DNA of 41,168 nucleotides, from the NCBI GenBank assembly GCA_002269645.1, contig NIVC01003307.1:106801-147968 (forward strand), in the 5' to 3' direction. Both the position numbers and the translations under genes were made by a program. Below are positions 5,676-41,168 of this stretch, piece by piece (the first letter of the stretch is position 1; each line of letters starts with the position of its first letter). The stretch comes from Macrostomum lignano. Taxonomy: Eukaryota. The notes below the pieces were generated by a model. The model saw only the letters and a program-made list of their open reading frames with translations, ran no database searches and was not told the DNA's origin.

Positions 5676-6104
<429 letters not shown>

Positions 6105-15480: not shown

Positions 15481-15585
15481 TCTTAATTTTAACAATAGAA
15501 TTCGTGAAGAACAGAAAATAAAAAATAGGAATTATCTATGAAAACTTGGCAATAGACACATTAACTTACGTATCTTTTAAAGAAT

Positions 15586-19771: not shown

Positions 19772-19775
19772 AAAC

Positions 19776-22314: not shown

Positions 22315-23783
22315 CTAGGGCGAAAATAACGTTCTGTGATAATATTACAGCAAAAAAATCGAAACGCTCTTTAGTCGCACTGTACTTATAGTTATAACTG
22401 TAAATGGGATATCGCTCCAGGAAATCGATTGAGCAGTTTATCTGCATGTATGAAACTGACATTCTAGCCAGAGTTATATAGGTTCCAGTATTGTCTTAAC
22501 AATATTAATATTTTCCCTGAGGTGCAGAAAGGTGAATCATCAGAACTCGTAGTACAATACATGTAGTTCAAGCTAAGATGAAGCAACTCTGGTACATGTA
22601 CGCTTGCACAGTGCATTCCGATTCCTAAAATAGCGTTGTGCAAACAGATGCTGATCGTAACAAAAATATTTTCATTTATAGAATACAGCAGTCGTGCTTT
22701 ATTTCAAAGTCAGCGGTAGTCAAAAATGGGAGAAAATAATTGGGTATCAAAGCCTGTTAAACTTCAAGAACTATATTAAAAAAATTTGACAACAAAACCG
22801 AATCGTCTCGTGTCAAAGAAAACAAAAACAATGCCTTGAGAACGGCAAGGCCGTCATAAGCAGAAACGTCTTTAGCACCTTTTTATTTTTTACTTTGAAT
22901 ACAGAAAAAAAACAAAAATAATTGCACAAACAAACTGTTCGTTGCCTAAAAAATGCTTGGCAGCAAAGGATGTTGGCTCCTTTGAACTGCATATTTCAGC
23001 AGCTCATATTATAAGGCAATAATAATTCGACATAAAATGCAAACAGAAGACTTAAATTTGCTTTTTGCAAAATCGAAAAAAAATTATTACGGAAAAAGGC
23101 GAATTACGATGCCAAACTGCTGGAAAAAAGCCTATAAAAATGCTTAAAAACTGGATGGAGTCTACTTCAGATGCACTGACCACTAGAAGTTACCGGTGTA
23201 TATCCCGGGACAAATCTCAGGCTTCTATTCGATTGGGAGGTTCATCTACATAATTGTTTGTTGAATTACTGTTCGGGAAGCTGGAAGCGGAAGAGTATAA
23301 TATGTTCTCTATTAGAAATTTTGGCAGAATTCACTGTATCAAATGGTATTTTACCAACAGACAATCTTGGGGGAGTCTCTGGTAGCATTTTTCGCTATTT
23401 TTTCAAGTCGATAAGCTCGTAAACTTATGAAGCCATCTCAGTTTCATGTGCATTAAATGCATTTTGCATCCTATTTGGGCTTACACGCATCCAAAATACG
23501 TTTGCCAAACTAAATGGAACTTTTGTCTATGGCAGCAAGGCTGGCACAGCAGCATTTGAAATTTAAAAAATGCTATCTGCCTAACCAGGGACAACTAAGA
23601 CCCTCGGGACGCAAAACGAGCCAATTCATGGCAAAAAATCTGAGGGGCTCGCTCAAAAGTACTGTTCTATGGCTTTTTCAAGTCTTCTCTGCTATCAGGC
23701 AAATTAAAATTGCTTTAGCTGCGGCCAGCAGTGAAGCTAAGCTGAACTAAATCAAGAGAAGCATTTTTTATTCACTTGATGAA

Positions 23784-24095
23784 ATGCCAAGAAAGTGCAG
23801 CGTATTTCCGTGCTCGTGAAATTACAACTCTGAAGCCGTTCGAACACGGACATTTGCGTTTCCCAGAGATCCACAGGAGCGAGAGCGATGGAGAAAGGCG
23901 CTGCCAAATATTCTCCAGGTAAGAAACCAGATCATTTGCTGTCATTACTGCTGCATAATTCCGCTTCAATTCTGCATGCCAGTCTCGTCCAAACAACTTG
24001 AAACCCAAAATTTATTATTTTAGAGAGTGACTGACCATATGGGCGTGTGCGTAAAGCATTGGCCAAGCGATGCTCCAATGGTCAAGATCCCATGA
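23784..24095 (+). pseudogene. THAP zinc-finger remnant with a 105-nt GT-AG intron (MPRKCSVFPCS*NYNS...FAFPRDPQERERWRKALPNILQ|RVTDHMGVCVKHWPSDAP)
   Basis: The C2CH ligands plus the conserved FP and W of THAP are restored when 23919-24023 (cag|gtaaga...ttttag|) is spliced. There is a premature TGA at codon 12 and a stop at 24095. Confidence 0.8.
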
Positions 24096-24596
24096 TAGAA
24101 AGCTTCGGAAGTTAGATGCTCAGTAGGTGAAGTTCCAGCGTTTCCTTTATGTACGGGCTACTGACTGTTTGTGTCGTCTTGTCCTTGGAGTTCCGTATTT
24201 GCTTCTATCTTCTTGCCGTTGGAGTTTCATCTTCGCTTTCATCCTTTATCTTCTTGCCGTTGGAGTTATATCTTTGCTTTCATATTTTATCTTCTTGCCG
24301 TTGGAGTTTTTTGTTGATATGGCGGTTACTTTATTGTAAATACATTGTAATTATATCACTGGTTCCTATTCTTTAAATTAAATACTCGACATTGCCTCGC
24401 TTTACTATTTAATCTAACCGTTAATGCCTGATAGCAGAGAAGACTTGAAAAAGCCATAAAACAATACTTTTAAGCGAGCCCCTCAGATTTTTTGCCATGA
24501 ATTGGCTCGTTTCGCGTCCCGAGGGTTTTAGTTGTCCCTGTGCCTAACTATAACAAAAAAGAGCATTTTTAGAATGGTCCAAACTGCGCTTCGATA

Positions 24597-24991
24597 ACGT
24601 ATTAAACATTCGCCGACACTTATTCAGACACTTCTACAGACACTTTAGTTTCTGTCGTACGAATCGTAGGAACAAGCATTAAATTTGTTTATTCCTAACA
24701 AACTATCAGTAAAATGCTTTATTTTAAGCTTTTTTAATTTTATTTTATAAATTATGAATCATGAAATTTGTTATTCTGCATAGATTCTCTTCACGTGAAG
24801 AAGAAAGTTAAATTTGTCTAGGACACTTCCTAATTCATATTTAATAAAATAAAGCAAAAAAAGCTTAAAATAAAGCAATTCCTAGTTTGTTAGGAATCAA
24901 CAAATTTAATGCTTGTTCCTACGATTCGTACGACAGAAACTAAAGTGTCTGTAGAAGTGTCTGAATAAGTGTCGGCGAATGTTTAATACGT
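24597..24991. mobile_element. 395-bp hairpin MITE with ACGTATT termini, nested in the right arm of the THAP element
   Basis: About 140-bp near-perfect TIRs (acgtattaaacattcgccgacac.../...gtgtcggcgaatgtttaatacgt) and TSD cttcgata(a) at 24589-24596 and 24992-24999/25000. Confidence 0.92.
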
Positions 24992-25181: not shown

Positions 25182-26648
25182 TTATTCACGCATGGCCAAG
25201 CCAGCCGAGATCAGCTGACTGGCCATGAGGCAGCCGCTATTACCGGAGCCGGACACGTGAAGGTCAACCGGGTAGCAGGGCAGGCCGCCGCTTTCCGAGC
25301 TGTACACGTCCGCGTAGGCCGACACGGCTGAGGTGGTGGCGGCGGCCCCGCCGGACTCTTTCAGATCGGCCCAGCTCGGGTCCGCCAGACGACGCATCAG
25401 GCAAACGGCCTTGCTGGTCAAGCCGGGCAGGGCGCCGACGGCCAGGCCGCGCAGGCGGCACAGCGAGGCCCGCGTCGGGGCGGTCATAAAAGCCGCCAGC
25501 TCGGCGTCAGTCGGTGGTACGACATAGATTTCTGACAAAGATTTGCAAGTTTCAACGTAGCCAAAATCGACTAAGAGAACGGTTGCCGTGGCGTTGCTAA
25601 GGTTCAATCTGAGTAGGCGCATTCGGTGATAGCGGCGCGTTGGATCGTGCGAATACTGGCCGAGGTACACGCTGTTCACATCGATTTCGTTCTGGTCGCC
25701 CAGACTGACGAGGTGCGCCGGCTTCTTGTACGTGAGCGGCGGAGCTGGCGGCGATGGAGGTGCACCAGGAAGTATGCAATAGAATTCGCTTGGCGAGACT
25801 ATATGCGTTAGCTTTAGCGGGCCACTATAGATACAGTGTAGTTTGTCGCCAGGCGGTTTGATCTCGTTTCCAGGCGGTTCGATTTCGTTGCTAGGCGGTT
25901 TAGCCTCGTTGTTAGGCGGTTTAGCCTCGTTGCTAGGGGGTTTAGCATCGTTGCTAGGCAGTTTAGCATTGTTGCTAGGCGACTTAGCCTCGTTGCTAGG
26001 CGATTTAGCCTCGTTGCTAGGCGATTTAGCCTCGTTGATAAGCGGCTTGATTTCGTTGCTAGGCCATTTAGTCTCGTTGCTAGGCGGTTTTAACAAGTCG
26101 TTAGACTTGCAAAACTTCAAGGCATTAGCAGTCTGCTTGGCAAGCGACAACTCATTAATAGGCAGGTTCGAATTTTCATCGCACAGAGCAGCATTGATGT
26201 TTGTAATCGGTCGCATAGCAACAACAGGCGCGGTTCCGGCGGCTTGCTGATTGCCGTACCGTACTGGTTTATAGCGACGGACAAGACGCAGCTCGATAAG
26301 ACGCTCGCTAACTGATTGACCAGCCTCATCAAGCAGATCCTCGACAACGATGGCAGCCTGGCCGCAGTCTGTACTGTCGGACAAGCGCAGCGTGACTGGC
26401 TGCTCCAGCGCCAAGCGGGTGATTTCAGCCAGGGCCGCCTCCTCGTCAATGGCAAGCAGGCCTTCCAGGCTGCAGCACCGAACTAGCGGCGGACTCGTTT
26501 GTAGCAGCCCGGCTGGCAGTTCGAATATCTGATTCAGCGGCACCCGTTCGGTGTTCCCGAAATCGATGAAATTAATAAGTGCGTCTTCCTGCCCGGCCCT
26601 GATGCACATGCCTCGGTAGAGGCTGCCTTCGTAGCATGCGGCGAACAG
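25182..26648 (-). CDS. Last coding exon of a Tudor-domain (TDRD-like, extended Tudor) protein: core of Tudor 1, a repeat linker and Tudor 2
   Basis: AACYEGSLYRG...FIDFGNTERVPLNQIFELP...PPLVRCCSLEG and THIVSPSEFYC...RYHRM...LLVDFGY...ASLCRLRG are extended-Tudor signatures. Acceptor ttggtgctttccaccccag| is phase 0, giving 488 codons plus TAA. Confidence 0.92.
   Translation of the reverse strand: MFAACYEGSLYRGMCIRAGQEDALINFIDFGNTERVPLNQIFELPAGLLQTSPPLVRCCSLEGLLAIDEEAALAEITRLALEQPVTLRLSDSTDCGQAAIVVEDLLDEAGQSVSERLIELRLVRRYKPVRYGNQQAAGTAPVVAMRPITNINAALCDENSNLPINELSLAKQTANALKFCKSNDLLKPPSNETKWPSNEIKPLINEAKSPSNEAKSPSNEAKSPSNNAKLPSNDAKPPSNEAKPPNNEAKPPSNEIEPPGNEIKPPGDKLHCIYSGPLKLTHIVSPSEFYCILPGAPPSPPAPPLTYKKPAHLVSLGDQNEIDVNSVYLGQYSHDPTRRYHRMRLLRLNLSNATATVLLVDFGYVETCKSLSEIYVVPPTDAELAAFMTAPTRASLCRLRGLAVGALPGLTSKAVCLMRRLADPSWADLKESGGAAATTSAVSAYADVYSSESGGLPCYPVDLHVSGSGNSGCLMASQLISAGLAMRE
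25851..26091 (-). repeat. In-frame 21-bp coding repeat, ~11.5 copies of K(P/S)PSNE(A/I)
   Basis: Visible in the translated ORF between the two Tudor domains. Confidence 0.9.
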
Positions 26649-26770
26649 CTGGGGTGGAAAGCACCAATTTTTACTGCTTAAGCTTTCAATAGGGAAGCTA
26701 GAGAAGGCCAGGTAAATCATAACTAACACGGAGCTGTCAGCTTAAGCGTCAGAATAGATATCAGAGTAAA

Positions 26771-28627
26771 AATTGGGACAGAATTGCATGTATTGCACAC
26801 AATTGGGACAATTGCATGGATTGCACACAATTGGGACAATTGCATGGATTGCACACAATTGGGACAGAATTGCATGGATTGCACACAATTGGGACAATTG
26901 CATGGATTGCACACAATTGGGACAATTGCATGGATTGCACACAATTGGGACAGAATTGCATGGATTGCACACAATTGGGACAGAACTGCATGGATTGCAC
27001 ACAATTGGGACAGAACTGCATGGATTGCACACAATTGGGACAATTGCATGGATTGCACACAATTGGGACAGAATTGCATGGATTGCACACAATTGGGACA
27101 GAACTGCACACATTGCACACAATTGGGACAGAATTGCATGGATTGCACACAATTGGGACAGAATTGCATGGATTGCACACAATTGGGACAGAACTGCATG
27201 GATTGCACACAATTGGGACAGAACTGCACACATTGCACACAATTGGGACAAAACTGCATGGATTGCACACAATTGGGACAGAACTGCATGGATTGCACAC
27301 AATTGGGATTGCCCACAATTGGGACAGAATTGCATGGATTGCACACAATTGGGACAGAACTGCAAGGATTGCACACAATTGGGACAGAATTGCAAGGATT
27401 GCACACAATTGGGACAGAACTGCATGGATTGCACACAATTGGGACAGAATTGCAAGGATTGCACACAATTGGGACAAAACTGCATGGATTGCACACAATT
27501 GGGACAGAATTGCAAGGATTGCACACAATTGGGACAAAACTGCATGGATTGCACACAATTGGGACAGAATTGCATGGATTGCACACAATTGGGATTGCAC
27601 ACAATTGGGACAGAATTGCATGGATTGCACACAATTGGGATTGCACACAATTGGGACAGAATTGCATGGATTGCACACAATTGGGACAGAACTGCATGGA
27701 TTGCACACAATTGGGACAGAACTGCAAGGATTGCACACAATTGGGACAGAACTGCAAGGATTGCACACAATTGGGACAGAATTGCAAGGATTGCACACAA
27801 TTGGGACAGAACTGCATGGATTGCACACAATTGGGACAGAACTGCATGGATTGCACACAATTGGGACAGAATTGCAAGGATTGCACACAATTGGGACAGA
27901 ACTGCATGGATTGCACACAATTGGGACAGAATTGCAAGGATTGCACACAATTGGGACAAAACTGCATGGATTGCACACAATTGGGACAGAATTGCATGGA
28001 TTGCACACAATTGGGATTGCACACAATTGGGACAGAATTGCATGGATTGCACACAATTGGGACAAAACTGCATGGATTGCACACAATTGGGACAGAATTG
28101 CAAGGATTGCACACAATTGGGACAGAACTGCATGGATTGCACACAATTGGGACAGAATTGCAAGGATTGCACACAATTGGGACAAAACTGCATGGATTGC
28201 ACACAATTGGGACAGAATTGCATGGATTGCACACAATTGGGACAAAACTGCATGGATTGCACACAATTGGGACAGAATTGCATGGATTGCACACAATTGG
28301 GATTGCACACAATTGGGACAGAATTGCATGGATTGCACACAATTGGGATTGCACACAATTGGGACAGAATTGCATGGATTGCACACAATTGGGACAAAAC
28401 TGCATGGATTGCACACAATTGGGACAGAATTGCATGGATTGCACACAATTGGGATTGCACACAATTGGGACAGAATTGCATGGATTGCACACAATTGGGA
28501 TTGCACACAATTGGGACAGAATTGCATGGATTGCACACAATTGGGACAAAACTGTATGGATTGCACACAATTGGGACAGAATTGCATGGATTGCACACAA
28601 TTGGGACAGAATTGCATGGATTGCACA
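26771..28627 (+). repeat. 30-bp satellite (TTGCACACAATTGGGACAGAA(T/C)TGCATGGA) with 28-bp and 16-bp variant units, ~1.86 kb, intronic
   Basis: Directly visible array. It fills most of the 2,115-nt Tudor intron (26649-28763). Confidence 0.98.
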
Positions 28628-28763
28628 ACATTTCCTAGTTGTGTGCTGTCATTCCCATTCTCAGAAGATAGTCTGAAAATGCCACTCTCAGTGTAACATT
28701 AATTAATAATCTAAAAACATTAAAATATCAATGTGTTGGCATTATGTAGACAAGACAGCTTAC

Positions 28764-28919
28764 CTCTCCAGGAACTGGCACAGCTGGCTTAGAGCAAGCC
28801 TCAACCAGCTGCTGCACTTGAGCTAAATCATTTGCCTCCTTATCAAGATTGATGTAAAGTCTGTCAAAATCAGCCACATGAGCTAGAATGCCAGATAGCA
28901 TGATTGAGCAATTAGACAT
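28764..28919 (-). CDS. Upstream coding exon of the Tudor gene (MSNCSIMLSGILAHVADFDRLYINLDKEANDLAQVQQLVEACSKPAVPVPGE)
   Basis: It supplies the N-terminal strands and helix of extended Tudor 1. Donor gag|gtaagc is phase 0, matching the phase-0 acceptor at 26648. An acceptor ttttttaccag| at 28931 means the true start may lie further upstream. Confidence 0.82.
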
Positions 28920-29370: not shown

Positions 29371-29627
29371 CATACATGCGCAACCCCCCTGATTTACACT
29401 GGCCATGCGACTTACTTTTTGACCAAAAATGCGACTTACCTGTGAAAGAAACCCTAACGCAATTTTGGGTAAACGGCAGGAGTAACTATGACTGTCTTAT
29501 AAGGGCTAAATGCCTCGTCATCTAATTAGTACTACATCTGTATTCTATAGGCTGGGCATTTTTGCGACTTACCCCTGGTCCACCACAATTTACGGTGGCC
29601 AGATCGGCCAGCAGTTGCGCATGTATG
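29371..29627. mobile_element. MITE B: 257 bp, perfect 14-bp TIR CATACATGCGCAAC, 9-bp TSD tatataaac, carrying a 28S rRNA fragment
   Basis: TIRs at 29371-29384 and 29614-29627; tatataaac at 29362-29370 and 29628-29636. Confidence 0.88.
29467..29530 (+). other. Degenerate 28S rRNA fragment (helix 69-71 region; R2/I-PpoI target); not an rRNA gene
   Basis: GGGTAAACGGCAGGAGTAACTATGACTGTCTTATAAGGGCTAAATGCCTCGTCATCTAATTAGT versus conserved eukaryotic 28S GGGTAAACGGCGGGAGTAACTATGACTCTCTTAAGGTAGCCAAATGCCTCGTCATCTAATTAGT. Confidence 0.92.
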
Positions 29628-32481
29628 TATATAAACAGACATTGTTTAGAACAAATCATCTTATTATGATACAGAATCATATACATACATTATTATGCAT
29701 ACATGTCATAAGAGGCCATGACCATCTTATTTTGGTAATGCTTAAAGACAAAAAAACTTGGTTATTAAGTAATTGAGAATTACTAAAGAAATTTAAAAAA
29801 TCATAAAAAGACAAACCTGTTTTCAAGTAATACACAAAATCAAAAGCCAATAAAATTTTAGAGTTAGACTATTTAGTATATAATAAGACTATTACCAAGG
29901 ATATGATAGGTAAGAATAGTCAAAGTTATACTTAAGTTATTTTAAAATATATAATTTATTAATTTATTACCTATTTACTACAACTATTAAAGTAAATAGT
30001 GAGGGTTAAGCATTGAATTAAGGCTTATATAAAAAAGCATTTAGTTTCAGAAAAAAAGTTAGAATTAGCCTTCATAATGATGTAGCATTAATGCTAAGAA
30101 TAAAAATTACAGAAATTATTAATCTTTAATAACTATATATAAATATAAATAAAGATGGGACAAAATGAGATTTTGGCTTTAAGCCAAAGTTTATAGGGAA
30201 TAGCTGAGATGTCAAGGCTAAGGTCAAAAGCTATATGTTGTATATTCAAAACTTTTTACTATATTATTTGCTGGCTCCTCACAAGGGGTTGCTGATTAAA
30301 GAAGTGTCATAATCAAAGTCAGGAGATTTATTTAGGAATCACTGCAATATCAAGGCTTAGAGAGATTGCTATAATGCTGTAATGCTATAATAACTCTAGG
30401 AGAATTACTGAAATGTTAATGCTTTAGGGTTAGGGTTAGAAGGATGACATATTTTTGAGGAATTCAAGGCTTATTGGGAGTCATTGCTGAGATATCAAAG
30501 GGGGAAAGGAGTTGATATGTCAAGGCTTATAGGGGGGAATTGCTTAGATGTCAATGCTTATAAGGGATTGCTGAGGTTATTGCAAAGAGATACTATAGAT
30601 AGTTTATTTGAAAACTTTTATTGCATTTTTTGGCTCCCTAATAGGGGGTGCTGATTGCCAGTCTAATCCTAAATTCCCTTTTTCATATATGAGCCTCAAT
30701 TCCACAACCCCAAAAACTCTTGACTTTTCAAATGTAAACTTCTTAGTTCTTAATTCCCTAGTTCTTTCTTTTCATTTATAAGCTACAATATTAATACTTA
30801 ACTTGTGGCACATTCTAAATATTTGCCCTACATTCAAATGACTATTTGGTATTCAGATTGTCAACTTTCCAATTCTGATTTGAACTAGAAATTTGGTCAA
30901 TTTGATTCAATTCCAAATATTCAAAAGATTTCTCCTATCTCTATTGCTAACATCCAACCAACATAGCTTATTAAGCTAGGCAATAAGCAAGTATATTAAG
31001 TTGCAAAAACATTATCTAAAAAAAAATCTAAAAAGAAACAAAAAAGGAAAATATAATTATAAAAAAGAAAACAAGAGAAAAAGAAAAAAAGAAAAGAAAA
31101 AAGCAAATAAGAAATAAGTTGCAATTAGAGGTAGCCAGGTTGTATTTAGTTGAAGCTAAGTTGCACTTGGATAGGCAAGATAAAGCTAGGCCTAAGCTAG
31201 ACTCTGGAAGGTTATGTATATATTGGAATTTTCTGGTATATCATTGGAAAGTTTAGCTGTTTTGGCATACCATTTTGAGCTTAAGAAAATTTTGGTATAT
31301 AAACTACAATAATTTGTTTTTAAAACTACATGTGCATTTTAACAATAATAAGAGTTTTAAAAATTAAAGAATACTATTTTTATATTATATATATAAACTA
31401 ATATCATAACAGTACTTTTTTAAATAGAACCTTTGAAAAATAGTTTTATCTGTTTAAAATTTGTTGGTGATAACATTTTTTCTTTTTGTAAGATGTTATA
31501 AAAAATTTTATTTAAAAACATTTTTCAGAAAATTAAAAAAATTTTTCACTTTGATAGCATTTTCAATCCTTTTAATTGTTACTTTATTGTTGTAATTGCA
31601 AAAGGTCCTTTAATTGTTGCAACTGCAAAATAAGGTCCTTTATTATCATTTTTCTAATATACTATATTGCACTATCCAATCCAAAGACTAGGGCCTAAGT
31701 TGCTTTTAGAGGGAATATTAAAAATATAGAAAATACAATAGTTTATATAAAATCTAGACTTATATTTAAGTTGAACTATTTGAGTATAGTAGCTTTAATA
31801 AATGACAAACAAAGCAATATTTTTAAGAAAAAAATAAGTGAATTATCTAAAAATATAATGCAATGTATTTATTTTATTTAAGCCAAGCAAAAGACCAATA
31901 TATTAATATTAATATTAACATTTAGCCAAAGCTATTATATAAAGTTATAATAGGCCTAGCCTAGCCTAATAGCATTGCCCACCCCCAATATAGGACTACC
32001 TATAGGTATAGGTGATAAGGTGAAAATATCAATTGACTGAAGGTAAAGCAATCAGTAGGCCTATCCATTGCAGCCATAGGCTAGCCTACTCAGGCTAGGC
32101 CTACTCTGGAAGATTAGTGCATGCCTGCATGCCAGAATTTTCTTATAGGACTGCCTGTAATCGCTTAAAATAAATAACCTAGGCCTTATCACACACTAGA
32201 CCTAATTGTTATTGTCTAATTGTTACTACAATTTATTCGATATCGATTCGATAGCATAGGCCTAATATAAATATTATATATGGTCTATATAAATAGGCCT
32301 ACATACATCGGTTTGTCTCATATAGAGTAGCGACAGTCTGTGTCACTTAGTGTTGCTAAGAGCTAATAGCCAGCAGCCAGCTGCATAAACAAAAGCTGAC
32401 GATGGGTATTTCAGATAATGGTGGGAGATGGAAGACTGAGTACCTTAGATAGATCGCCGACGAGCATGCACGTCCACAGAC

Positions 32482-34534
32482 GTAGTAGTAGTAGTAAGAG
32501 AATTTGGCTCAGGCAATTGGCCTGTTTGGCCAATATATTATAGAGCTATGTATTTGGAAAAGTTTTCGAAATAGAAGTTTATAAAGACGATTTGCCGCGA
32601 GTTAGTAGTAAGAGTTAGAGATTTATTGTAAAAGATAAAGTATTTGAAAGCGCGCCAGAATTTTTACGGTATTTTTGGACGAAAAGTGACGACTAACAAC
32701 TAACAACGAGTATAAATATTAATACAAAAATGAGTACAAATTACGAGGTATAGCTTTAATTGCGAGATTACTTTGGTAAGCGAGTTTGTAAAAAAAGATG
32801 TAGTATTTTTGAAAGCGCGTGATGTTTCAAAGCGTGAAAAAACGAACATAAACAATACTTCGAAAGAACTTTACGTTTAACGAATAACGACGATTTAAAT
32901 AGGGAATTAAAAAAGACAGTAAATGAATAAACAACTGAAAAGCGGATTTGTTACACTGCTAATGTATCTGATTCAGTTTGTTTAACTGTTTTAGCTATTC
33001 ATGACTTCATATATTTTAGCTACACCAGTGAGTTCTTTTCTGACTCTTTTTTCATTTGTAGCATATCCTATCTTGTGTATTTGATTGCTATTTAAGAGGT
33101 ATTGACAGAAGTATTTTTTCCTGATCTCTTCAGTTTGTGGACATTCGGTCAAGTAGTGTAGAATGTCAAAACCATTTCGCGCTCCACACATTTTACATGG
33201 TTCTTGAGAAAAAAAGTTGGGTGTAATCTCGCATTTCAGTTTTAGGAGGGTTGTTAAGAATTTTTTGTTTCTAAATGTACATGGAAAGTAATCTGAAAGG
33301 TCGGGCCTGCAGATTTTTTTGTAGAGATAGGCGTTTTTGTAGAGTTTAATATGTTGCTGATTCTCTAGCTTTTGGCTAAGTTCTCTTTCTCTGTGTATCT
33401 TGAGGTGCTTTTTCACTAGGTATTTCTCGTTATTAAAGCTTTGGGAAAGTTTATCTTCAGTTAGTGCTTTTAGGTCTATACTTTCTAGTTTCTTTAGTAC
33501 ATTCATTTTCCATGGATTTTTTTGGCCGGTGCTTGAGTAGAAAATTTCTAGAGTCGTTTGGCAGAGTTTTTTGTGTCTAATCTTCAGCCAGTAGATGAGG
33601 TAGGTTTTAGCGATTCGTTGAGAGATTGGAGTAAGCTCAAGTTCTGATGATATCACACTGTTGCTAGCAAATTTTGGTAGATTGAGGAGATATTTGTAGA
33701 ATTTCAGCTGAATATTATCAATAGCTTTTGTATCAGACATGGTAGCCAGAGGGCCCCAGAGCTCACAACCGTAAGTGATAACGGGGGTAACAAGCGCGTC
33801 AAATAGTCTGCGAATGAGTGTGATGTCTAGGGACGTATTCTTTACCCTATGGAGTAGGGAAAACATGGCTGTATATCCCTGCTTAGTTTGGTGTTCAATA
33901 CATTTTTAAAGCTGTTTTTTGGTTCAAAAATAATTCCCAGGTATTTAAATTCATTTACTTCTTCTATTTCTTGGTTGTCGTAGTATATTTTTGTAGCAAT
34001 GCTATCTGTGTCGTTTTTTTGTCTGGTATTGCCCTGCATAAACTTTGTTTTGCTTGCGTTTACTTTCAAGTAATTTTGTTTGCAGTAATTTTCCATAGTC
34101 GTAAATGTGTCTTGAAGTTCGTCTTTGTTTTTAGCTAGAATGGCTTGATCGTCTGCAAAGAGTAGGATGAGTGGGAAAGCAGATCTCGTAAGAGAGCGCC
34201 TAGCGCTAGAGAGTTCAAGATATTCAACAATGTCGTCAATATATAGTTCAAAAAGAATGGTAGAGAGAGGGTTGCCTTGAAGAACACCTTTAGATATTGG
34301 GATTGGCTGGGTTTCATCATCATCATCATCTTTTTTTAGAATGAAGCAGGCATTTTTATGCATGTTCTTGATAAGTTCCATCATTTGACCTTTAATACCC
34401 TGATTATCCGTTTTGCACCAAAGGGTCGGTTGATTTAAGCTATCGAAGGCTTTTTCATAGTCAACAAATCCAATAAAGAGTTCTTCTTTGTTGTAGATGG
34501 ATTGGTTTATAATGTTGTAAAGATTAAAACATTG
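32482..34534 (-). mobile_element. 5'-truncated non-LTR retrotransposon of the CR1/L2 group (Daphne/Crack-like), ~2 kb
   Basis: RT motifs FVDYEKAFDS, GVLQGNPLS, LFADD, FKYLG and YGCELWG, plus a C-terminal C..C...H...C. The ~490-nt 3'UTR ends in a ttggcc-aaaca-ggccaa stem-loop and a (TAC)5 tail. Confidence 0.92.
32991..34534 (-). pseudogene. Truncated reverse-transcriptase ORF with a frameshift near 33860-33870
   Basis: Two overlapping ORFs (33842-34582 and 32991-33866) join into one LINE ORF2 C-terminal half. The endonuclease and RT N-terminus are missing. Confidence 0.9.
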
Positions 34535-34784
34535 GTATTCATTTCCCGATTGACATTCAGATTCACATTCAAATTTTAACAAAGCCGCTGTAACTTTTCT
34601 TTACTTAAACGAAACGCTTTAAAATTTTACAAAAACTTTGACGCAATCAAGAAAAAAAAACTACGTAAAATATCTCGGCATTTAAAAAATAGACTGTACA
34701 AATTATTCACATATAAAGTTTGTTCCTATCTCCTTAGTGTATTATTATGCAACTCAACAAAACGGCTTAAAATACACGCAGAAA

Positions 34785-35757
34785 GCTACGAAACTTTATT
34801 TTTCTCTTGACGCATGCGAGATGCGTTGGCAAGTCAAAAATCAGCACCCTAGCTTAAAGCCTGTACGAGTTATTCACCTGCAAACTGTGTTCCTATCTCC
34901 GTAGTGTATTTTGGGGGTCCAGCTTGACATTCGCTGACAGACACTTCTACTCAACGCAGAGCTACGAAACTTTATTTTTCTCTTGACGCACGCGAGACGC
35001 GTTGGCAAATCAAAAATCAGCACCCTAGCTTAAAGCCTGTACGAGTTATTCACCTGCAAACTGTGTTCCTATCTCCGTAGTGTATTTTGGGGGTCCAGCT
35101 TGACATTCGCTGACAGACACTTCTACTCAACGCAGAGCTACGAAACTTTTTTTTTTCTCTTGACGCACGCGAGATGCGTTGGCAAGTCAAAAATCAGCAC
35201 CCTAGCTTAAAGCCTGTACGAGTTATTCACCTGCAAACTGTGTTCCTATCTCTGTAGTGTATTTTGGGGGTCCAGCTTGACATTCGCTGACAGACACTTC
35301 TACTCAACGCAGAGCTACGAAACTTTTTTTTTCTCTTGACGCATGCAAGATGCGTTGGCAAGTCAAAAATCAGCACCCTAGCTTAAAGCCTGTACGAGTT
35401 ATTCACCTGCAAACTGTGTTCCTATCTCCGTAGTGTATTTTGGGGGTCCAGCTTGACATTCGCTGACAGACACTTCTACTCAACGCAGAGCTACGAAACT
35501 TTATTTTTCTCTTGACGCATGCGAGATGCGTTGGCAAGTCAAAAATCAGCACCCTAGCTTAAAGCCTGTACGAGTTATTCACCTGCAAACTGTGTTCCTA
35601 TCTCTGTAGTGTATTTTGGGGGTCCAGCTTGACATTCGCTGACAGACACTTCTACTCAACGCAGAGCTACGAAACTTTATTTTTCTCTTGACGCATGCGA
35701 GTTGCGTTGGCAAGTCTAAAATCAGCACCCTAGCTTAAAGCCTGTATGAGTTATTCC
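34785..35757 (+). repeat. 176-bp tandem repeat in the left foldback arm, 5 full units plus a partial
   Basis: gctacgaaac recurs at 34785, 34961, 35137, 35314, 35490 and 35666. Confidence 0.97.
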
Positions 35758-36850
35758 AGTATTAGAGACTGTACGAGATTACAGTATTTACGCTTTCCGC
35801 CTCTGTAGTCTGGACAGTGACTAAGATTCAGGGAATTCATCTAATGGGAAACATATGACGGGATAGAAAGTTCACAAATTCGGCTCTGGTCATAGCTGGG
35901 TCACCCACCTGAGCCTTAAAAATAATTTCTGTACGGACCCCCTGCCACACATCCCTTAATGAGCACGCATCGCATCATTTTTACGCTGCTTTAGTGGGGT
36001 GGTCCCATGATCGGGAGTTGTTTGAGCCATCTGGTGTAGCCCGGAAGTCGAAAACGGGACTCATTGGGAGTCTGCTACACCATGCAGCCATGCAGAAGAC
36101 TTTTTAAACAGTGGATCCTCTTTCTGTGAATGATGAAGAGGTGACCGGACATTTTGTCAACCAGCATTTCGTCAACCGGCAGTTCGTCAACCAGACATTA
36201 CGGCAACTCAGCAAATTGTAGCTAGCTCTGCACCAGCCAAAGAATGTGAGAAGTGGTAATGCGATGTCAAAGAGGATGTGAACTTAAGCGCGATTTGGAT
36301 GCCGTGAGTCCAGCAACCAAACCGCAGCGAAATTCTCACTATTCAGACCCAAAATAGACAAGAAAAGTGTAATTGATCTTTCTTCCACTCCGGCCGCTTC
36401 CGCATGGGATAAATGGGGAAAATGGGGATTTCATGTGAACTTATAAGGCTCTGAAATGGAAGTGGTGGCCGATTGAGCTGGTTTCTCTATCGGATCTCTC
36501 TACTGGACCGACAATGAGAGAAGAATCGTTGAAAACCGATCTCTCTATCATTTGGTCTCCCTGAATGGGATAAATGGGGAAAATAGGGATTTCATGTGAA
36601 CCTAAGGCTCAAAGAATCCAGTATCGGCTGAGGATCGCCCCTTTCACGGAAAACTGACTGCTATTGAGTCAAATACCAGTAGGCTGGCTACGCTTTTCCG
36701 CTTTTCTGTCGAGTCGGCTAGATGTCATTATCGACAACTGTATTGCCAAATACAACCGATCGCACATTGGATTCCCTGAATCTTAGTCACTGTCCAGACT
36801 ACAGAGGCGGAAAGCGTAAATACTGTAATCTCGTACAGTCTCTAATACTA

Positions 36851-37476
36851 GAATAACTCGTACAGGCTTTAAGCTAGGGTGCTGATTTTTGACTTGCCAA
36901 CGCATCTTGCATGCGTCAAGAGAAAAATAAAGTTTCGTAGCTCTGCGTTGAGTAGAAGTGTCTGTCAGCGAATGTCAAGCTGGACCCCCAAAATACACTA
37001 CGGAGATAGGAACACAGTTTGCAGGTGAATAACTCGTACAGGCTTTAAGCTAGGGTGCTGATTTTTGACTTGCCAACGCATCTCGCGTGCGTCAAGAGAA
37101 AAATAAAGTTTCATAGCTCTGCGTTGAGTAGAAGTGTCTGTCAGCGAATGTCAAGCTGGACCCCCAAAATACACTACGGAGATAGGAACACAGTTTGCAG
37201 GTGAATAACTCGTACAGGCTTTAAGCTAGGGTGCTGATTTTTGACTTGCCAACGCATCTTGCATGCGTCAAGAGAAAAAAAAAGTTTCGTAGCTCTGCGT
37301 TGAGTAGAAGTGTCTGTCAGCGAATGTCAAGCTGGACCCCCAAAATACACTACAGAGATAGGAACACAGTTTGCAGGTGAATAACTCGTACAGGCTTTAA
37401 GCTAGGGTGCTGATTTTTGATTTGCCAACGCGTCTCGCGTGCGTCAAGAGAAAAATAAAGTTTCGTAGCTCTGCGT
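36851..37476 (-). repeat. The same 176-bp repeat inverted in the right foldback arm, 3 full units plus a partial
   Basis: gtttc(g/a)tagc recurs at about 36932, 37108, 37285 and 37461. Confidence 0.95.
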
Positions 37477-38362
37477 GTATTTTAAGCCGTTTTGTTGAGT
37501 TGCATAATAATACACTAAGGAGATAGGAACAAACTTTATATGTGAATAATTTGTACAGTCTATTTTTAAATGCCGAGATATTTTACGTAGTTTTTTTTCT
37601 TGATTGCGTCAAAGTTTTTGTAAAATTTTAAAGCGTTTCGTTTAAGTAAAGAAAAGTTACAGCGGCTTTGTTAAAATTTGAATGTGAATCTGAATGTCAA
37701 TCGGGAAATGAATACGTCGTCCACAGGCGTAGGCCTATAGAAAGACAGTCAGTCAACATTGAGTTATAAGCCAAAGGCAGGCAAACCAAAATTTAAAAGT
37801 GCCAATTAGTCCCAAATAAATTTTGTTTAATAGCTTTACGAATTAAAAAAATTATATAAAAAACCTTAATTTTGAATAAAACTTTTGACTTTTTGTTGTT
37901 TATCAGGGTAAAAAATGAAGAATTTGTTTGTATACATCCAATACTTTTTTTATTGTATTGCAAACTCAGCCCATGCGGCTGTGGCATGCATGATGGTCAC
38001 ATGCCGCGTCTGGGGCATGCGTTTAAATAATTGAGTGGCTGAAACGCGGCTAGCGACATGCAAGTGTGATTTCCTCAGACTTAAAGTAACTACATGTAGC
38101 GTATCGAGTTGCGAAATGCCGAATCTGCAAAGTTTTTCTAAACTCTCAGCGGCAGTAACAAATCTATGACAGGATTTAATAACGCTCCACTTAGTCAATT
38201 TATATTAGTATATTCGGTAATTTAGTCATGTCCATATCTTTTTTAGTAGCGTAGGAGTCTTTCTAGCAGTACTGCAGTATCATAACAACTTATAAAATCA
38301 TTTGTAAATAAATGTAGGCGACTCCTTGCAAATACGCGTCAAAACTTTAGCAAAAAAATGCA

Positions 38363-38512
38363 GCGAAACACCAGTGAAATGCTACCGAAACGCCGGCGAA
38401 TACAATGGCGGCAATTCGCCGGCGAATCGCTATAGCGGATAAAATGACAAAATCGCCGGCGATTCGCTATCGATAAAATTGCCGGCGAACCGGCGAGTTT
38501 TTTTCGAGAGGG
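38363..38512. repeat. Cluster of four (C/T)GCCGGCGA palindromic motifs, possibly a MITE fragment ending ...ttttcgagaggg
   Basis: Motifs at about 38391, 38417, 38454 and 38480; no matching left terminus found. Confidence 0.4.
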
Positions 38513-39077
38513 TTTATTACTCAAAAAAATTATTTTTTATTATATACATGATGCAGCGGATTTCCATCTACTGTAATTCTTATACATGTATAGCAGGCAT
38601 GTGTATATGTATAATTAAGCATGGACAATTACTTTAGTTATCCGTGTATGCTAAATATCTCGTAAATGTACAAAGTACGCTCGTATAAATTTGTATTACA
38701 TGTGCATTCAAAAGCTGCAGGAGTTATATTTCCATTCCAATTGCACGCAGCATATTTTGAAGTTATACATGCACAGGCACGTGTACATGTGTAAGCACAT
38801 ACATTTGCATGCCCCATCTGCGCTCATAAATCGAAAGCATTTCTAATCTTGCAGGCTAGGGCTTAAATATAAGCTGTTCCTACCATTGTGCGCTGACCAG
38901 TGTTACGAAAATAAGTCGACTGTTTTTCGATTTTGGTTAGCCTTGAAAGATAAGGGAAGAGTCTATCGCAGTGTTTTAGCTATCTCACTTTGTCTACAAG
39001 TATACTGACTTTAACCCTGAACATGCACTCTGCAGCCATAGGTAGCGGGCTCAAACAGCTCGCGAATCAACAAAGTT

Positions 39078-39243
39078 ATGCCTTCTTTAGATCCTTTTCA
39101 GCTCGACCAGCAGGCTCTAGACAACAAGCTAAAGCTACTGCAAGAGAGCCTCGAAAGATGGCGCCGCGTGAAGATTGACGCTGGTGAACTTACCTCGCAG
39201 GAGGAGCTTCAAGAAGCCGAGGATGAATTCAACTGGCTGCGCG
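39078..39243 (+). CDS. Exon 1 of a Syntaxin-6/10 N-terminal (Habc) domain protein (MPSLDPFQLDQQ...ERWRR...EFNWLR)
   Basis: The M-x-x-x-DPF start and helical pattern match the STX6 N-terminus (MSMEDPF...QRW...IDW). Donor g|gtaaga at 39244. Confidence 0.8.
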
Positions 39244-39705
39244 GTAAGATCTCGCATTTAGGTCTTTTTTCAATTCGTGCATCCAGTTTGCATGTAACAT
39301 GTACAGTTAAATGTGTTTTTTGAAAGTCCAATTGATCATAATCCTAGTGTAAATTGAATCATGCATGATATAGGAGCTAAAGGACTAACTAGACTTGACA
39401 TTTGAGATGTCAATTAGTTCTAATTCAGTGCTTTAGTTACCACCCAGTCACGTACATGTATGTATACATGCATGCATAGGTGAGGTTATCAGTCGCAGAG
39501 TTAAATATCGTCGGTATAGTAAATTATAAAATGCGCAAATAAAATAATCAGCATAACATACCTACAGGCATAGTGATGACGAAACGATCTATTTATTATA
39601 TCTACTAAAAAGTGGATAAAGCGAAGTTAACGCTAAAAGCAGTCTATTTTTTTAATATATAATACGCTCGGAGTGTTGTTAGTCGATGCCTTTCTGCTTT
39701 TACAG

Positions 39706-40079
39706 AAGAAATTGGAAAGTCGGTGAAAAGCATTGGCTGGGATCTGGACGACCTGGCCGAGACCCTTCGACGGATGTCTGAGCAAAACCGTCAGCCAGCG
39801 GAGGAAACCACAGCCCGAGGCGAGTACATCCGTAGAATGCGCCATCTTCTAACGACTATCGACGATGAGGTAAAAAAATCGTCTGAGGCTTTGGCAGCTT
39901 CAGAGTCACCAGATGGTCGTCAGAATCGGCATCAACAACAGCAGCAACCAGACTCGGGGATGAGTGCATCAACTGAGCGCCTCGTTGAATCTCTTCTGCA
40001 GCAGGACGACGAAGACGACGATGTGGAGCTGCTGATCCAAGACGACTCCAGTGTTCGGGCCGAAGACAGTTCAGCGTAG
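39706..40079 (+). CDS. Exon 2 of the Syntaxin-6-N-domain protein (EEIGKSVKSIGWDLDDLAETL...RGEYIRRMR...), stop at 40079 as assembled
   Basis: SIGWDLDDLAET corresponds to STX6 SIEWDLEDLDET. Acceptor ctttctgcttttacag| is in the correct phase after a 462-nt intron. Confidence 0.82.
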
Positions 40080-40255
40080 CGGTGGACGAGCAGCCGGCCT
40101 CTCCAATGATGCGGCTGTGGCGAAATCACCGACCGGCCGTCGTATTCGTGGGAGTTGTTGCACTACTGCTGCTGATCATTTTAATTGTGTCCTTGACCTC
40201 AGGTGAACACCGGAGCAAGGACTCCGGTCCGGTAACTGACTCTCCGGCGCATTAA
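40070..40255 (+). CDS. Probable C-terminal transmembrane anchor of the same gene in a different frame (…RLWRNHRPAVVFVGVVALLLLIILIVSLTSG…)
   Basis: A ~20-residue hydrophobic stretch preceded by basic residues. The frame is open from 39977 to TAA at 40255. Confidence 0.6.
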   Translation, partial: FSVAVDEQPASPMMRLWRNHRPAVVFVGVVALLLLIILIVSLTSGEHRSKDSGPVTDSPAH

Positions 40256-40729
40256 TCACTGGTTGTGGACGCCTATCTAGCATGCGCACCGACATGCAGC
40301 AACTGCGAAGACAAGTCATATTCAGTTTTTTTATTAGACCGAGGAAGACCTCGAAAAAGCTGAGGATGCACTTTTGTATTAATTTGCGGAGAGCTTGGAT
40401 AAGTAGCTGTAGCTACTGATGAATTTGATTTTGCTTCTCATTTTAAAAAATGTGCTTCTGTCGCATTCCTGTTTATGGACAATTGTTGGTTTATAAAAAG
40501 CATTAAACATTGTACGGGTCGACTCTATATCAGAGTCAAAGTCATGTTAACCACTGCTGTGCTGTATGATTGCCAGACATTCATGCGAAGTTAGCAAAGT
40601 TTAAGCTTATACGACCTATATGCTCAATCCCTGTCATTGTGTTCTCCAGATATCTAATAAAGAAATAAACAACGATGGTCAATTGAGCAAAGAAAAGTGA
40701 GCATTCTGTATTTTTAATTGCGATTCACG

Positions 40730-41024
40730 CAGGCTCGTCGCCACCGGGGGGACAGGGGAGACATGTCCCCCCCAGTAAAAGCTATGAGGGGGACATGCCA
40801 ATGCTTTGTCCCCCACCCCACCTTGTGACTCGTTGTGGTAATAAATAATTTTTCTTCAGGGCGCCAAAATATAGCGCGTTCGTGCTAAAATAAGTGCTTG
40901 CGGCGCTAAAATGAGCGCTGACAACACGATTCTCACAATAATGGAAATATAGGAATTTAGTCATCTACATGTTGAATTCTTGGCCTTGTCCCCCACCCAC
41001 CATAAAATCCATGGCGACGCCCTG
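40730..41024. mobile_element. 295-bp hAT MITE
   Basis: TIRs CAGGCTCGTCGCCA and TGGCGACGCCCTG, perfect 8-bp TSD gattcacg (40722-40729, 41025-41032) and subterminal GGGGGACA/TGTCCCCC motifs. Confidence 0.92.
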
Positions 41025-41168
41025 GATTCACGTAATTCCTCGTTAAAACAAATCTGATCTCTTTAAAATGCCTATATGTACCAATAGCAGCATTTGAATA
41101 CTCCGACTCGACTAATATTCAAGTTTCATTAGAAATTTATAGATCGTGTTTTGAGAAGTATCGCCATT

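What the first reader, a model, noticed from the sequence alone, without database searches (positions are those of the whole stretch)
32471..37726. 5.2-kb foldback transposon whose left TIR tip was split by a LINE using tail microhomology
Seen: removing 32482-34534 rejoins AC + GTATTCATTTCCCG into ACGTATTCATTTCCCG, the exact complement of the right end, and the whole unit is flanked by cgtccacag twice. The LINE's (GTA)5 tail abuts the ACGTA terminus, with gta repeated at the other junction. Established: CR1/L2-group LINEs prime on tail-like microhomology, and FB/MULE elements have modular long TIRs and 9-bp TSDs. Inference: the terminus itself is a LINE target, so retrotransposition immobilises the element and could recur family-wide.
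Basis: partly seen in the sequence, partly recalled or inferred. Interest (0 to 1): 0.72.

Follow-up and report, generated by a model that had tools for sequence, protein, structure and literature searches.

The report
Foldback transposon with nested LINE insertion
A recently inserted, non-coding foldback DNA transposon in the flatworm Macrostomum lignano has a truncated LINE retrotransposon lodged two bases inside its left tip; the structure is real, but it is an ordinary nested transposon, not evidence of a special targeting mechanism.

Summary
The window is Macrostomum lignano contig NIVC01003307.1. A 3,185-bp foldback element sits between two exact copies of CGTCCACAG. It has modular inverted repeats built of 176-bp tandem units and a non-coding middle. 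The 9-bp duplication and the insertion are therefore proven.

A 2,053-bp, 5'-truncated non-LTR retrotransposon lies on the minus strand between AC and GTATTC of the left tip. It has an RT domain, a 494-nt 3' UTR and a (TAC)5 tail. Removing it restores a perfect terminus. A second polymorphic 395-bp palindromic element in the window has the same ACGTATT ends, both intact.

Three claims are not shown:
- The microhomology is only 3 nt, from a single event.
- The LINE's CR1/L2 membership was not tested.
- Nothing supports tip targeting or recurrence across the family. No other FB or LINE copy could be reached, and the FB has 102 other GTA/TAC sites.

The closest analogues are Tetris/DAIBAM, Tm1 and Drosophila FB (Mutator-type foldbacks). 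Verdict: a new member of a known kind, of low to moderate interest.

The parts
32471..32479 (.). Left copy of the 9-bp target-site duplication CGTCCACAG
   Evidence: D13. It is present once only at the empty sites of L001 and L002.
32480..32481 (+). Outermost 2 nt (AC) of the foldback element's left inverted repeat, separated from the rest by the LINE
   Evidence: AC plus GTATTCATTTCCCG is the reverse complement of 37702-37717.
32482..32496 (-). LINE 3' tail: (TAC)5 on the LINE sense strand, (GTA)5 on the + strand
32497..32990 (-). LINE 3' untranslated region (494 nt)
   Evidence: It lies between the ORF stop and the tail.
32991..33866 (-). LINE ORF2 C-terminal portion (291-aa open frame) with a CX2CX9HX4C motif at 33141-33197
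   Evidence: The relatives P0001, P0005 and P0015 share the C-terminal motif.
33842..34534 (-). LINE reverse-transcriptase domain, 5'-truncated (starts at Pfam RVT_1 position 64). Motifs: FVDYEKAFD 34442-34468, QGNPLS 34262-34279, FADD 34148-34159. There is one frameshift relative to the downstream frame at about 33842-33866.
   Evidence: (RVT_1, E=9.5e-22).
34535..34783 (+). Left inverted repeat, outer domain (minus its first 2 nt). It has 12-bp subterminal repeats (ATTGACATTCAG / ATTCACATTCAA) and a degenerate copy of part of the 176-bp unit at 34691-34743.
   Evidence: (I10, I23, I11, D3, D6).
34784..35756 (+). Left inverted repeat, tandem array: 5.5 copies of a 176-bp unit
   Evidence: period 176, 97% matches; units 96.6-100% alike.
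35757..35839 (+). Left inverted repeat, inner domain
   Evidence: I1; 97.6% to the right inner domain.
35840..36767 (.). Non-palindromic middle domain (928 nt). It has no ORF longer than 44 aa, a 15-nt x4 tandem at 36150-36213 and two 40-nt direct repeats.
   Evidence: No Rfam match.
36768..36850 (-). Right inverted repeat, inner domain
   Evidence: I1.
36851..37476 (-). Right inverted repeat, tandem array: 3.6 copies of the 176-bp unit
37477..37717 (-). Right inverted repeat, outer domain, ending ...CGGGAAATGAATACGT (intact tip)
37718..37726 (.). Right copy of the 9-bp target-site duplication CGTCCACAG

Best explanation
Two successive, independent transposition events hit one intergenic site of Macrostomum lignano. 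The site lies between a Tudor-domain gene and a syntaxin-6-like gene.

(1) A non-autonomous foldback-type cut-and-paste DNA transposon of 3,185 bp inserted and duplicated 9 bp of target (CGTCCACAG). Each inverted repeat has an outer domain of about 250 nt, a 176-bp tandem array and an 83-nt inner domain. The middle is 928 nt and non-coding. The 9-bp duplication and the architecture point to a Mutator-like (MULE/Phantom-type) transposase supplied in trans. That assignment is inferred, because no transposase was seen.

(2) Later, a non-LTR retrotransposon integrated by target-primed reverse transcription. The + strand of the FB tip was nicked either at AC^GTA or at ACGTA^TTC. The freed 3' end, possibly paired through GTA with the (UAC)n RNA tail, primed cDNA synthesis. 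Synthesis stopped inside the RT domain, leaving a 2,053-bp 5'-truncated copy. No FB bases were lost, and GTA appears at both junctions, either as a 3-bp duplication or as 3-nt priming overlap.

Shown: both insertions, their boundaries, the 9-bp duplication and the empty site. Inferred: the order of events, the priming register, the superfamily of the FB, and that the split tip now prevents excision.
For: - Source: the window is NIVC01003307.1 of assembly GCA_002269645.1.
- Empty sites: two other copies of the locus in that assembly align to both flanks at 98.6-99.6%. These are NIVC01001210.1 (L001) and NIVC01002379.1 (L002). Both read GCA-CGTCCACAG-GCGTAGG with one copy of the 9-mer and no footprint.
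- Inverted repeats: the outer 125 nt are 100% complementary, and 692 nt are 98% complementary.
- Tandem arrays: 176-bp units, 5.5 copies on the left and 3.6 on the right.
- No coding capacity or known RNA in the FB proper.
- LINE: RVT_1 at E=9.5e-22 starting at model position 64; reading frames open apart from one frameshift; (TAC)5 tail. More distant relatives (25-33% identical: P0013, P0035 and others) carry an AP-endonuclease domain (Pfam Exo_endo_phos_2; faint for P0013). One of them (P0013, locus L008) has a (CT)n tail.
- Related element: a 395-bp palindromic MITE at 24597-24991 is absent from L001 and L002. It has the same ACGTATT termini, an 8-bp (8-10) duplication, and shares ACATTCGC[C/T]GACA...CAGACACTTCTAC with the 176-bp unit.
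- Literature: foldback structure with 8-10-bp duplications indicates Mutator/Phantom (PMC3169594, PMC4079207, PMC6446971). Overlaps of one to several bp at LINE 3' junctions are known for CR1, L2 and RTE (PMC6007223, citing Ichiyanagi and Okada 2008).
Against: - No allele with the FB but without the LINE was found. Both other copies are empty, so the order of the two events is inferred, not observed.
- No transposase or autonomous partner was identified, so the MULE assignment rests on duplication length and architecture only.
- The microhomology is 3 nt from one event.
- The single frameshift in the LINE lies next to homopolymer runs in a long-read assembly and may be a sequencing error, so it says little about age.
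Confidence: 0.85

Rival explanations
1. The LINE was already inside the FB copy at a donor locus, and the composite FB+LINE (5,238 bp) transposed here as one unit.
For: No LINE-less FB allele exists among the three assembled copies; the other two are both empty. Because of the GTA overlap, the composite's outermost 5 nt still read ACGTA, like the native tip.
Against: Only 5 nt of the native terminus would adjoin the cleavage site. The rest of the 250-nt outer domain, including the 12-bp subterminal repeats, lies 2 kb away. Cut-and-paste transposases generally need the contiguous terminal inverted repeat (general knowledge, not tested here). No second composite copy was seen, though only about 106 kb was searched.
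Confidence: 0.1
2. The whole 5.2-kb unit is a single retrotransposition event: a read-through RNA carrying FB sequence as 5' transduction plus the LINE. The 9-bp repeat would then be a LINE target-site duplication.
For: LINE insertions can make duplications of about 9 bp. The LINE tail points outward, towards the left duplication.
Against: - Two bases (GT on the LINE strand) lie between the tail and the duplication. They are exactly the bases that complete the inverted repeat.
- The putative RNA would have to start precisely at the FB's terminal nucleotide.
- The LINE is 5'-truncated inside its RT domain right at the FB junction. This fits insertion into the FB, not co-transcription with it.
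- A related MITE with the same ends makes an 8-10-bp duplication with no LINE present.
Confidence: 0.02
3. FB termini are preferred landing sites for this LINE family. The cause could be that ACGTA matches the (TAC)n tail, or that transposase nicks or cruciform bases at the tip supply priming ends. Tip capping would then recur across the family.
For: The insertion is within 2-5 nt of the tip, with a 3-nt overlap to the tail. If GTA/TAC sites in the FB were hit at random, only about 2 of 102 would be at a tip.
Against: There is one event, and it was noticed because of its position. Three other ACGTATT tips in the window are intact. The priming end is not at the transposon/flank boundary, where a Mutator-type transposase would cut. 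No further copies could be examined.
Confidence: 0.07
4. The structure is an assembly artefact, such as a chimeric long read or mis-join near a contig end.
For: The element lies 3.4 kb from the end of the contig, and the assembly is from long reads.
Against: A mis-join is not expected to produce an exact 9-bp duplication, exact reconstitution of the terminus, flanks collinear with two other contigs on both sides, and a typical 5'-truncated LINE with a tail.
Confidence: 0.02

Closest known systems
Tetris foldback transposon and its MITE partner DAIBAM (Drosophila virilis; PMC4079207)
   Same: Nearly the same blueprint. Each inverted repeat has an outer flanking domain, internal tandem repeats (about 220 bp there, 176 bp here) and an inner domain. 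The middle is non-coding. Duplications are 8-10 bp. The tandem unit shares a short stretch with the outer domain (37 bp at about 80% there; 53 nt at 83% here). A short MITE shares the terminal part of the inverted repeat.
   Different: A different phylum and no sequence similarity. The MITE here shares only the terminal 7 nt plus internal motifs. No satellite expansion of the 176-bp unit was seen in the DNA examined. The Tetris superfamily is itself only inferred.
Tm1 Mutator/Foldback family of root-knot nematodes (Phantom subclass of MULEs; PMC3169594)
   Same: Composite inverted repeats of variable length built from tandem motifs, with unequal arms within one element. Duplications are mostly 9 bp. 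The family includes MITE-like and non-coding members.
   Different: Tm1 repeats are 13-15 bp units and its ends are asymmetric 7-bp motifs. Here the units are 176 bp and the ends are symmetric (ACGT...ACGT). Tm1 has an identified transposase-encoding member; none was found here.
Drosophila FB elements and Mutator-like elements in general (MULE/Phantom/Rehavkus; PMC6446971, PMC5499845)
   Same: Long inverted repeats made of tandem repeats and a 9-bp duplication. MULE groups with 9-bp duplications are recorded in Platyhelminthes (Curupira, Phantom, a Schmidtea subgroup).
   Different: No DDE/MULE transposase, FLYWCH, SWIM or PHD domain is present to test membership.
Galileo and other P-superfamily foldback-like elements (mentioned in PMC4079207)
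   Same: Long inverted repeats with internal tandem repeats that carry extra transposase-binding sites.
   Different: Galileo makes 7-bp duplications (from my own knowledge). Here the duplication is exactly 9 bp.
Non-LTR retrotransposons with simple-repeat tails (CR1, L2, RTE groups) and their 3'-junction overlaps (PMC6007223, citing Ichiyanagi and Okada 2008)
   Same: A simple-repeat tail rather than poly(A), 5' truncation, a very short or absent duplication, and 1 to several nt of overlap between the tail and the target.
   Different: The clade of this LINE is not established. It has a C-terminal CX2CX9HX4C motif, and its nearest relatives are about 31% identical and unnamed.

Membership tests
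Foldback-type DNA transposon (structural class) | Long terminal inverted repeats that make up most of the element and are built from tandem subrepeats | tested here: met
   The inverted repeats are 1,307 nt and 950 nt of a 3,185-bp element. 176-bp units occur 5.5 and 3.6 times. Arms are 96-100% complementary.
Foldback-type DNA transposon (structural class) | A bona fide insertion: a target-site duplication and an unoccupied site | tested here: met
   Exact 9-bp duplication. Clean empty sites in L001 and L002.
Mutator-like elements (MULE, including Phantom and FB) | Target-site duplication of 8-11 bp, most often 9 bp | tested here: met
   9 bp for the FB. 8 bp (8-10 ambiguous) for the related MITE. 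Reference ranges come from PMC3169594 and PMC6446971.
Mutator-like elements (MULE, including Phantom and FB) | A DDE transposase with a MULE domain, in the element or in an autonomous relative with the same termini | not testable with these tools
   The FB has no ORF. No autonomous copy was found in the window or in L001, L002, L004 and L005. The rest of the M. lignano genome could not be searched by DNA.
P superfamily foldbacks (Galileo type) | 7-bp (7-8) target-site duplication | tested here: not met
   The duplication is exactly 9 bp. The bases outside it differ on both sides.
hAT superfamily | 8-bp target-site duplication | tested here: not met
   9 bp for the FB. A different element in the window, at 23586-24540, does fit hAT.
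Non-LTR (LINE) retrotransposon | A reverse-transcriptase domain of the non-LTR type | tested here: met
   RVT_1 at E=9.5e-22 with motifs F.DY.KAFD, QG.PLS and FADD. All 69 homologues carry an RVT_1 domain, and a subset of the more distant ones also carry AP-endonuclease domains.
Non-LTR (LINE) retrotransposon | Signs of target-primed reverse transcription: a 3' tail at one junction, variable 5' truncation, and no LTRs or inverted repeats | tested here: met
   A (TAC)5 tail at 32482-32496. Truncation lies inside the RT domain at 34534. There are no terminal repeats.
Non-LTR (LINE) retrotransposon | An AP-endonuclease domain | not testable with these tools
   This copy lacks everything upstream of RT motif A. 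More distant relatives (25-33% identical: P0013, P0035 and others) have Exo_endo_phos domains, a faint match in P0013.
CR1/L2 group of LINEs | Placement of the RT domain within the CR1-group clade | not tested
   No labelled reference set was available. The nearest hits are unnamed and 24-33% identical.
CR1/L2 group of LINEs | A simple-repeat (non-poly-A) 3' tail | tested here: met
   A (TAC)5 tail. This feature is not exclusive to the group, because I, RTE and some R1-clade elements also have such tails (from my own knowledge).
CR1/L2 group of LINEs | Short overlap between the tail and the target at the 3' junction | tested here: inconclusive
   A 3-nt GTA overlap in one event. The chance expectation is about 1/64, and it cannot be told apart from a 3-bp target-site duplication.

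The most novel reading that the evidence does not exclude
The ACGTA termini of this foldback/MITE family are preferred integration sites for the (TAC)n-tailed LINE. Either the tip pairs with the RNA tail, or nicks left by the transposase at the ends are used as primers. LINE 'capping' would then be a recurrent way in which one transposon family disables another in M. lignano.
Probability: 0.07. Interest if true: 0.55.

Novelty: new member of a known kind. Interest (0 to 1): 0.22.

Why it matters
The locus documents recent mobility of several transposon families in Macrostomum lignano, a regeneration and transgenesis model whose repeat content is poorly classified. Within 41 kb, five insertions differ between three near-identical copies of the locus:
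- the foldback element;
- the LINE nested in it;
- a related MITE;
- a hAT-like element;
- a fifth element in the L002 contig.

The foldback family has a 176-bp tandem unit and ACGTATT ends. It appears to be undescribed: a full-text search found no paper linking foldback elements with this species. It is a candidate source of tandem repeats and of ectopic recombination, as Tetris is in Drosophila virilis. The three-copy structure of the assembly gives built-in empty sites, which makes it a convenient system for profiling target sites. The specific idea that LINEs target transposon tips would be interesting, but it currently rests on a single event.

Tried and rejected
- Exact-protein look-ups of the LINE ORF, an FB tandem-unit ORF and the Fcf2 ORF found nothing. 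The collection holds M. lignano only as NCBI gene models, so transposon copies cannot be reached that way.
- blastn and tblastn of the LINE, FB, MITE and hAT-like element against the window, L001, L002, L004 and L005 found no further copies.
- Two scans of metagenome contigs, one with the FB tip and one with a 176-bp-unit motif, gave 0 hits, as expected for an animal genome.
- Rfam on 32000-38200 gave no match. Six-frame translation of the FB middle showed no reading frame.
- I tried to assign the LINE to a clade through its relatives' neighbours. The locus of P0001 has no clear tail. The loci of P0015 and P0013 show a coiled-coil ORF1 and a (CT)n tail but no diagnostic ORF1 domain. The clade remains unresolved.
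- The single-event 5'-transduction model was considered and rejected. The GT between the tail and the duplication completes the inverted repeat. The LINE is also truncated at the FB junction.
- Excision footprints were considered as an explanation for the empty sites and rejected. Both sites are clean single copies with no extra bases.
- The other ACGTATT/AATACGT 7-mers in the window (22075, 23501, 33833) do not pair into elements. They occur at the frequency expected by chance.


Full report
SOURCE AND CONTEXT

An ORF at 14773-15495 (Fcf2 domain) is 100% identical to a Macrostomum lignano protein. Cluster members and look-ups place three copies of the locus in assembly GCA_002269645.1. They lie on contigs of 147,968 bp (NIVC01003307.1), 335,260 bp (NIVC01001210.1) and 179,440 bp (NIVC01002379.1).

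The reverse complement of L006, from NIVC01003307.1, is identical to window 15182-38934. From the record range of L006, the window corresponds to bases 106801-147968 of that contig and runs to its end.

The finding lies in the intergenic region between two genes:
- a Tudor-domain gene on the minus strand (ORF 25182-26729, with a likely upstream exon near 28728-28919);
- a syntaxin-6-like gene on the plus strand (from about 39078).

CHECK OF THE OBSERVATION

Every sequence statement is correct.
- CGTCCACAG occurs at 32471-32479 and at 37718-37726.
- The right end reads CGGGAAATGAATACGT (37702-37717).
- The left side reads AC (32480-81), then a 2,053-bp insert (32482-34534), then GTATTCATTTCCCG (34535 onward). 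Removing the insert gives ACGTATTCATTTCCCG, the exact complement of the right end.
- The outer 125 nt of the arms are 100% complementary, or 127 nt counting AC/GT.
- The insert starts with (GTA)5, and GTA recurs at 34535-37.

THE EMPTY SITE

The window was aligned to the other two copies of the locus.
- In L001, window 29613-32485 and 37718-41168 align at 98.6% and 99.4%. The two blocks overlap by 15 nt in the subject.
- L001 reads GAGCATGCA-CGTCCACAG-GCGTAGGCCTATAG. This is identical to the joined window flanks with one copy of the 9-mer.
- L002 gives the same result.

Both sites are clean, with no footprint. They are therefore unoccupied sites rather than excision products. The insertion and its 9-bp duplication are established.

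The 15-nt near-repeat that the repeat finder reports (D13) has a simple explanation. It is the 9-bp duplication plus a chance resemblance between the FB tip with the LINE tail (ACGTAG) and the right flank (GCGTAG).

ANATOMY OF THE FOLDBACK ELEMENT

Without the LINE the element is 3,185 bp.

Each arm has three parts:
- an outer domain of about 250 nt, essentially identical between arms apart from a 1-nt difference in an A-run;
- an array of 176-bp units, 5.5 copies on the left and 3.6 on the right, with units 96.6-100% alike;
- an 83-nt inner domain, 97.6% identical between arms.

Further features:
- The order of unit variants is shared between the arms. Left unit 3 equals right unit 1, and left unit 1 is 99.4% identical to right unit 0.
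- The outer domain begins with 12-bp subterminal repeats (ATTGACATTCAG, ATTCACATTCAA). Their core, TTGACATTC, recurs once per 176-bp unit.
- Positions 34691-34743 of the outer domain are 83% identical to part of the unit. The array therefore looks like an expansion of outer-domain sequence.
- The 928-nt middle (35840-36767) has no reading frame and no Rfam match.

The element is non-autonomous.

THE NESTED LINE

The insert lies on the minus strand.
- A 230-aa frame (33842-34534) matches Pfam RVT_1 (E=9.5e-22) from model position 64 onward, so the copy is 5'-truncated inside the RT domain.
- A 291-aa frame (32991-33866) continues the protein after one frameshift. It carries a CX2CX9HX4C motif at 33141-33197.
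- A 494-nt 3' UTR and a (TAC)5 tail follow.
- The frameshift lies next to homopolymer runs, so it may be a long-read error.

Relatives:
- Database relatives are at most 33% identical (31% for the best overall match, P0001). Most have no name, and the few names given point to molluscs, a clam-symbiont MAG and two vertebrates.
- Several of the more distant hits have AP-endonuclease domains.
- The three full-coverage relatives that were read (P0001, P0005, P0015) share the C-terminal HRLxIExGR...CxLC..DE.H....C motif.
- One relative (P0013, locus L008) has a coiled-coil ORF1 and a (CT)n tail.

I could not assign the clade.

HOW THE LINE WENT IN

The first-strand cDNA is the window's + strand, so the primer was the + strand 3' end to the left of the LINE. 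There are two possible registers.
- Nick at ACGTA^TTC. The primer's GTA pairs with UAC of the RNA tail, and GTA is then duplicated at the far junction, giving a 3-bp duplication.
- Nick at AC^GTA. There is no pairing and no duplication.

The sequence cannot distinguish the two. No FB base was lost.

A 3-nt overlap has a chance expectation of about 1/64 for a single junction. It matches the 'one to several bp' overlaps reported for CR1, L2 and RTE (PMC6007223, citing Ichiyanagi and Okada 2008). The microhomology reading is therefore consistent but unproven.

A RELATED ELEMENT IN THE SAME WINDOW

Comparison with L001 and L002 shows that window 23586-24991 holds two further insertions that those contigs lack.

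One is a 395-bp palindromic MITE at 24597-24991:
- 115-nt arms, 97% complementary;
- ends reading ACGTATTAAACATTCGCC...;
- a duplication CTTCGATA, 8 bp, with 8-10 bp possible because the flank continues AC.

It resembles the FB in three ways:
- the terminal ACGTATT;
- 12-nt-spaced subterminal repeats (GACACTT);
- the motifs ACATTCGC[C/T]GACA and CAGACACTTCTAC, which also occur in the FB's 176-bp unit.

The ACGT terminus is therefore a family-level feature. The pairing of a large foldback with a short MITE sharing its tips repeats the Tetris/DAIBAM situation in Drosophila virilis (PMC4079207). Both MITE tips and the FB right tip are uninterrupted.

ORDER OF EVENTS AND RIVAL READINGS

The most parsimonious order is FB first, then LINE. 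After the split, only 5 nt of the native terminus (ACGTA, thanks to the overlap) remain at the outer end. The rest of the outer domain is 2 kb away. This is an inference: neither other copy carries an FB-only allele.

Rivals:
- Composite transposition of FB+LINE remains possible; I give it about 0.1.
- A single retrotransposition with 5' transduction is disfavoured. The GT between the tail and the duplication exactly completes the inverted repeat. The RNA would have to start at the FB's first base, and the LINE is truncated at the FB junction.
- An assembly artefact is very unlikely given the exact duplication and the collinear flanks.

THE FAMILY-WIDE CLAIM

No other FB or LINE copy exists in the window, L001, L002, L004 or L005, which together make about 106 kb of partly overlapping sequence.
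- exact-protein look-ups failed;
- metagenome scans were empty.

The FB contains 51 GTA and 51 TAC trinucleotides, and three ACGTA plus three TACGT. The tip is therefore not a unique match to the tail. One tip of four in the window is hit. Targeting of termini is therefore speculation; I give it about 0.07.

COMPARISON WITH KNOWN SYSTEMS

The element works like, and is built like, the Mutator-type foldback transposons:
- Tetris: outer domain, about 220-bp tandem repeats, inner domain, non-coding middle, 8-10-bp duplications and a MITE partner (PMC4079207);
- Tm1: composite unequal inverted repeats, 9-bp duplications, Phantom transposase (PMC3169594);
- Drosophila FB.

MULE groups with 9-bp duplications are recorded in flatworms (PMC6446971).

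Membership of the MULE superfamily is supported by duplication length and architecture only. The defining transposase could not be tested. Galileo-type (7 bp) and hAT (8 bp) assignments fail on duplication length.

Nested LINE insertions in DNA transposons are commonplace.

VERDICT

The mechanistic extension to tail-microhomology targeting of termini and family-wide immobilisation is not supported by present evidence.

This is a new member of a known kind, a previously undescribed foldback/MITE family of M. lignano, caught with a young nested LINE. Interest is low to moderate.

Noticed in passing
window 24597-24991: A 395-bp palindromic MITE that is absent from both other copies of the locus. 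It has 115-nt inverted repeats (97%), ends reading ACGTATTAAACATTCGCC..., and the duplication CTTCGATA (8 bp; 8-10 bp is possible). It shares the terminal ACGTATT and internal motifs with the foldback element's 176-bp unit, so it is probably mobilised by the same transposase.
   Followed up: yes
window 23586-24540: A 955-bp element absent from L001 and L002. It has 116-nt inverted repeats (96%), ends CAGGGAC...GTCCCTG and an 8-bp duplication TGCCTAAC, which is hAT-like. It carries a THAP-domain fragment with an in-frame stop at 23784-23921 (Pfam THAP E=7e-5, exactly at the cut-off) and a 41-bp tandem repeat at 24206-24309.
   Followed up: partly
L002, reverse-complement coordinates 16644-19898 (site corresponds to window 38164/38165): The third copy of the locus has its own 3.26-kb insertion 440 bp right of the FB site. 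Its inverted ends read CCCAC[A/G]TAACCAA..., with an apparent 2-bp duplication (CT). It has no similarity to the FB, the LINE or anything else in the window.
   Followed up: partly
window 26771-28627, 13402-14697 and 5676-6104: Three large tandem arrays: a 30/60-bp unit of about 1.86 kb just upstream of or inside the Tudor gene region; 39 copies of a 33-bp unit; and (CAGA)108. Copy numbers of the 30-bp and 33-bp arrays differ between the three contigs.
   Followed up: no
window 16991-17105, and 19778-20499 / 17411 relative to L002: Further insertion/deletion differences between the three copies of the locus. The window has 114 bp extra relative to L001 at 16991-17105. The window has about 720 bp at 19778-20499 that do not align to L002. 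L002 has about 1.3 kb extra at window position 17411. These were not characterised.
   Followed up: no
window 33842-33866: The only frameshift in the LINE's reading frame lies beside homopolymer runs. In a long-read assembly it may be a sequencing error, in which case the truncated copy would be undamaged and very young.
   Followed up: no
window 1-41168 (NIVC01003307.1:106801-147968): The window runs to the end of its contig. The three copies of this locus are 95-99.6% identical over long aligned blocks. Whether they are alleles or duplicates from the hidden polyploidy of M. lignano was not determined.
   Followed up: partly
L007 2874-3896 (unrelated marine or invertebrate contig carrying the LINE relative P0015): Next to the LINE relative lies a gene with a YqaJ / viral alkaline exonuclease domain (E=1e-22). 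A Harbinger-type DDE transposase and a THAP gene are also nearby, so the region is transposon-rich. This is not relevant to the finding.
   Followed up: no
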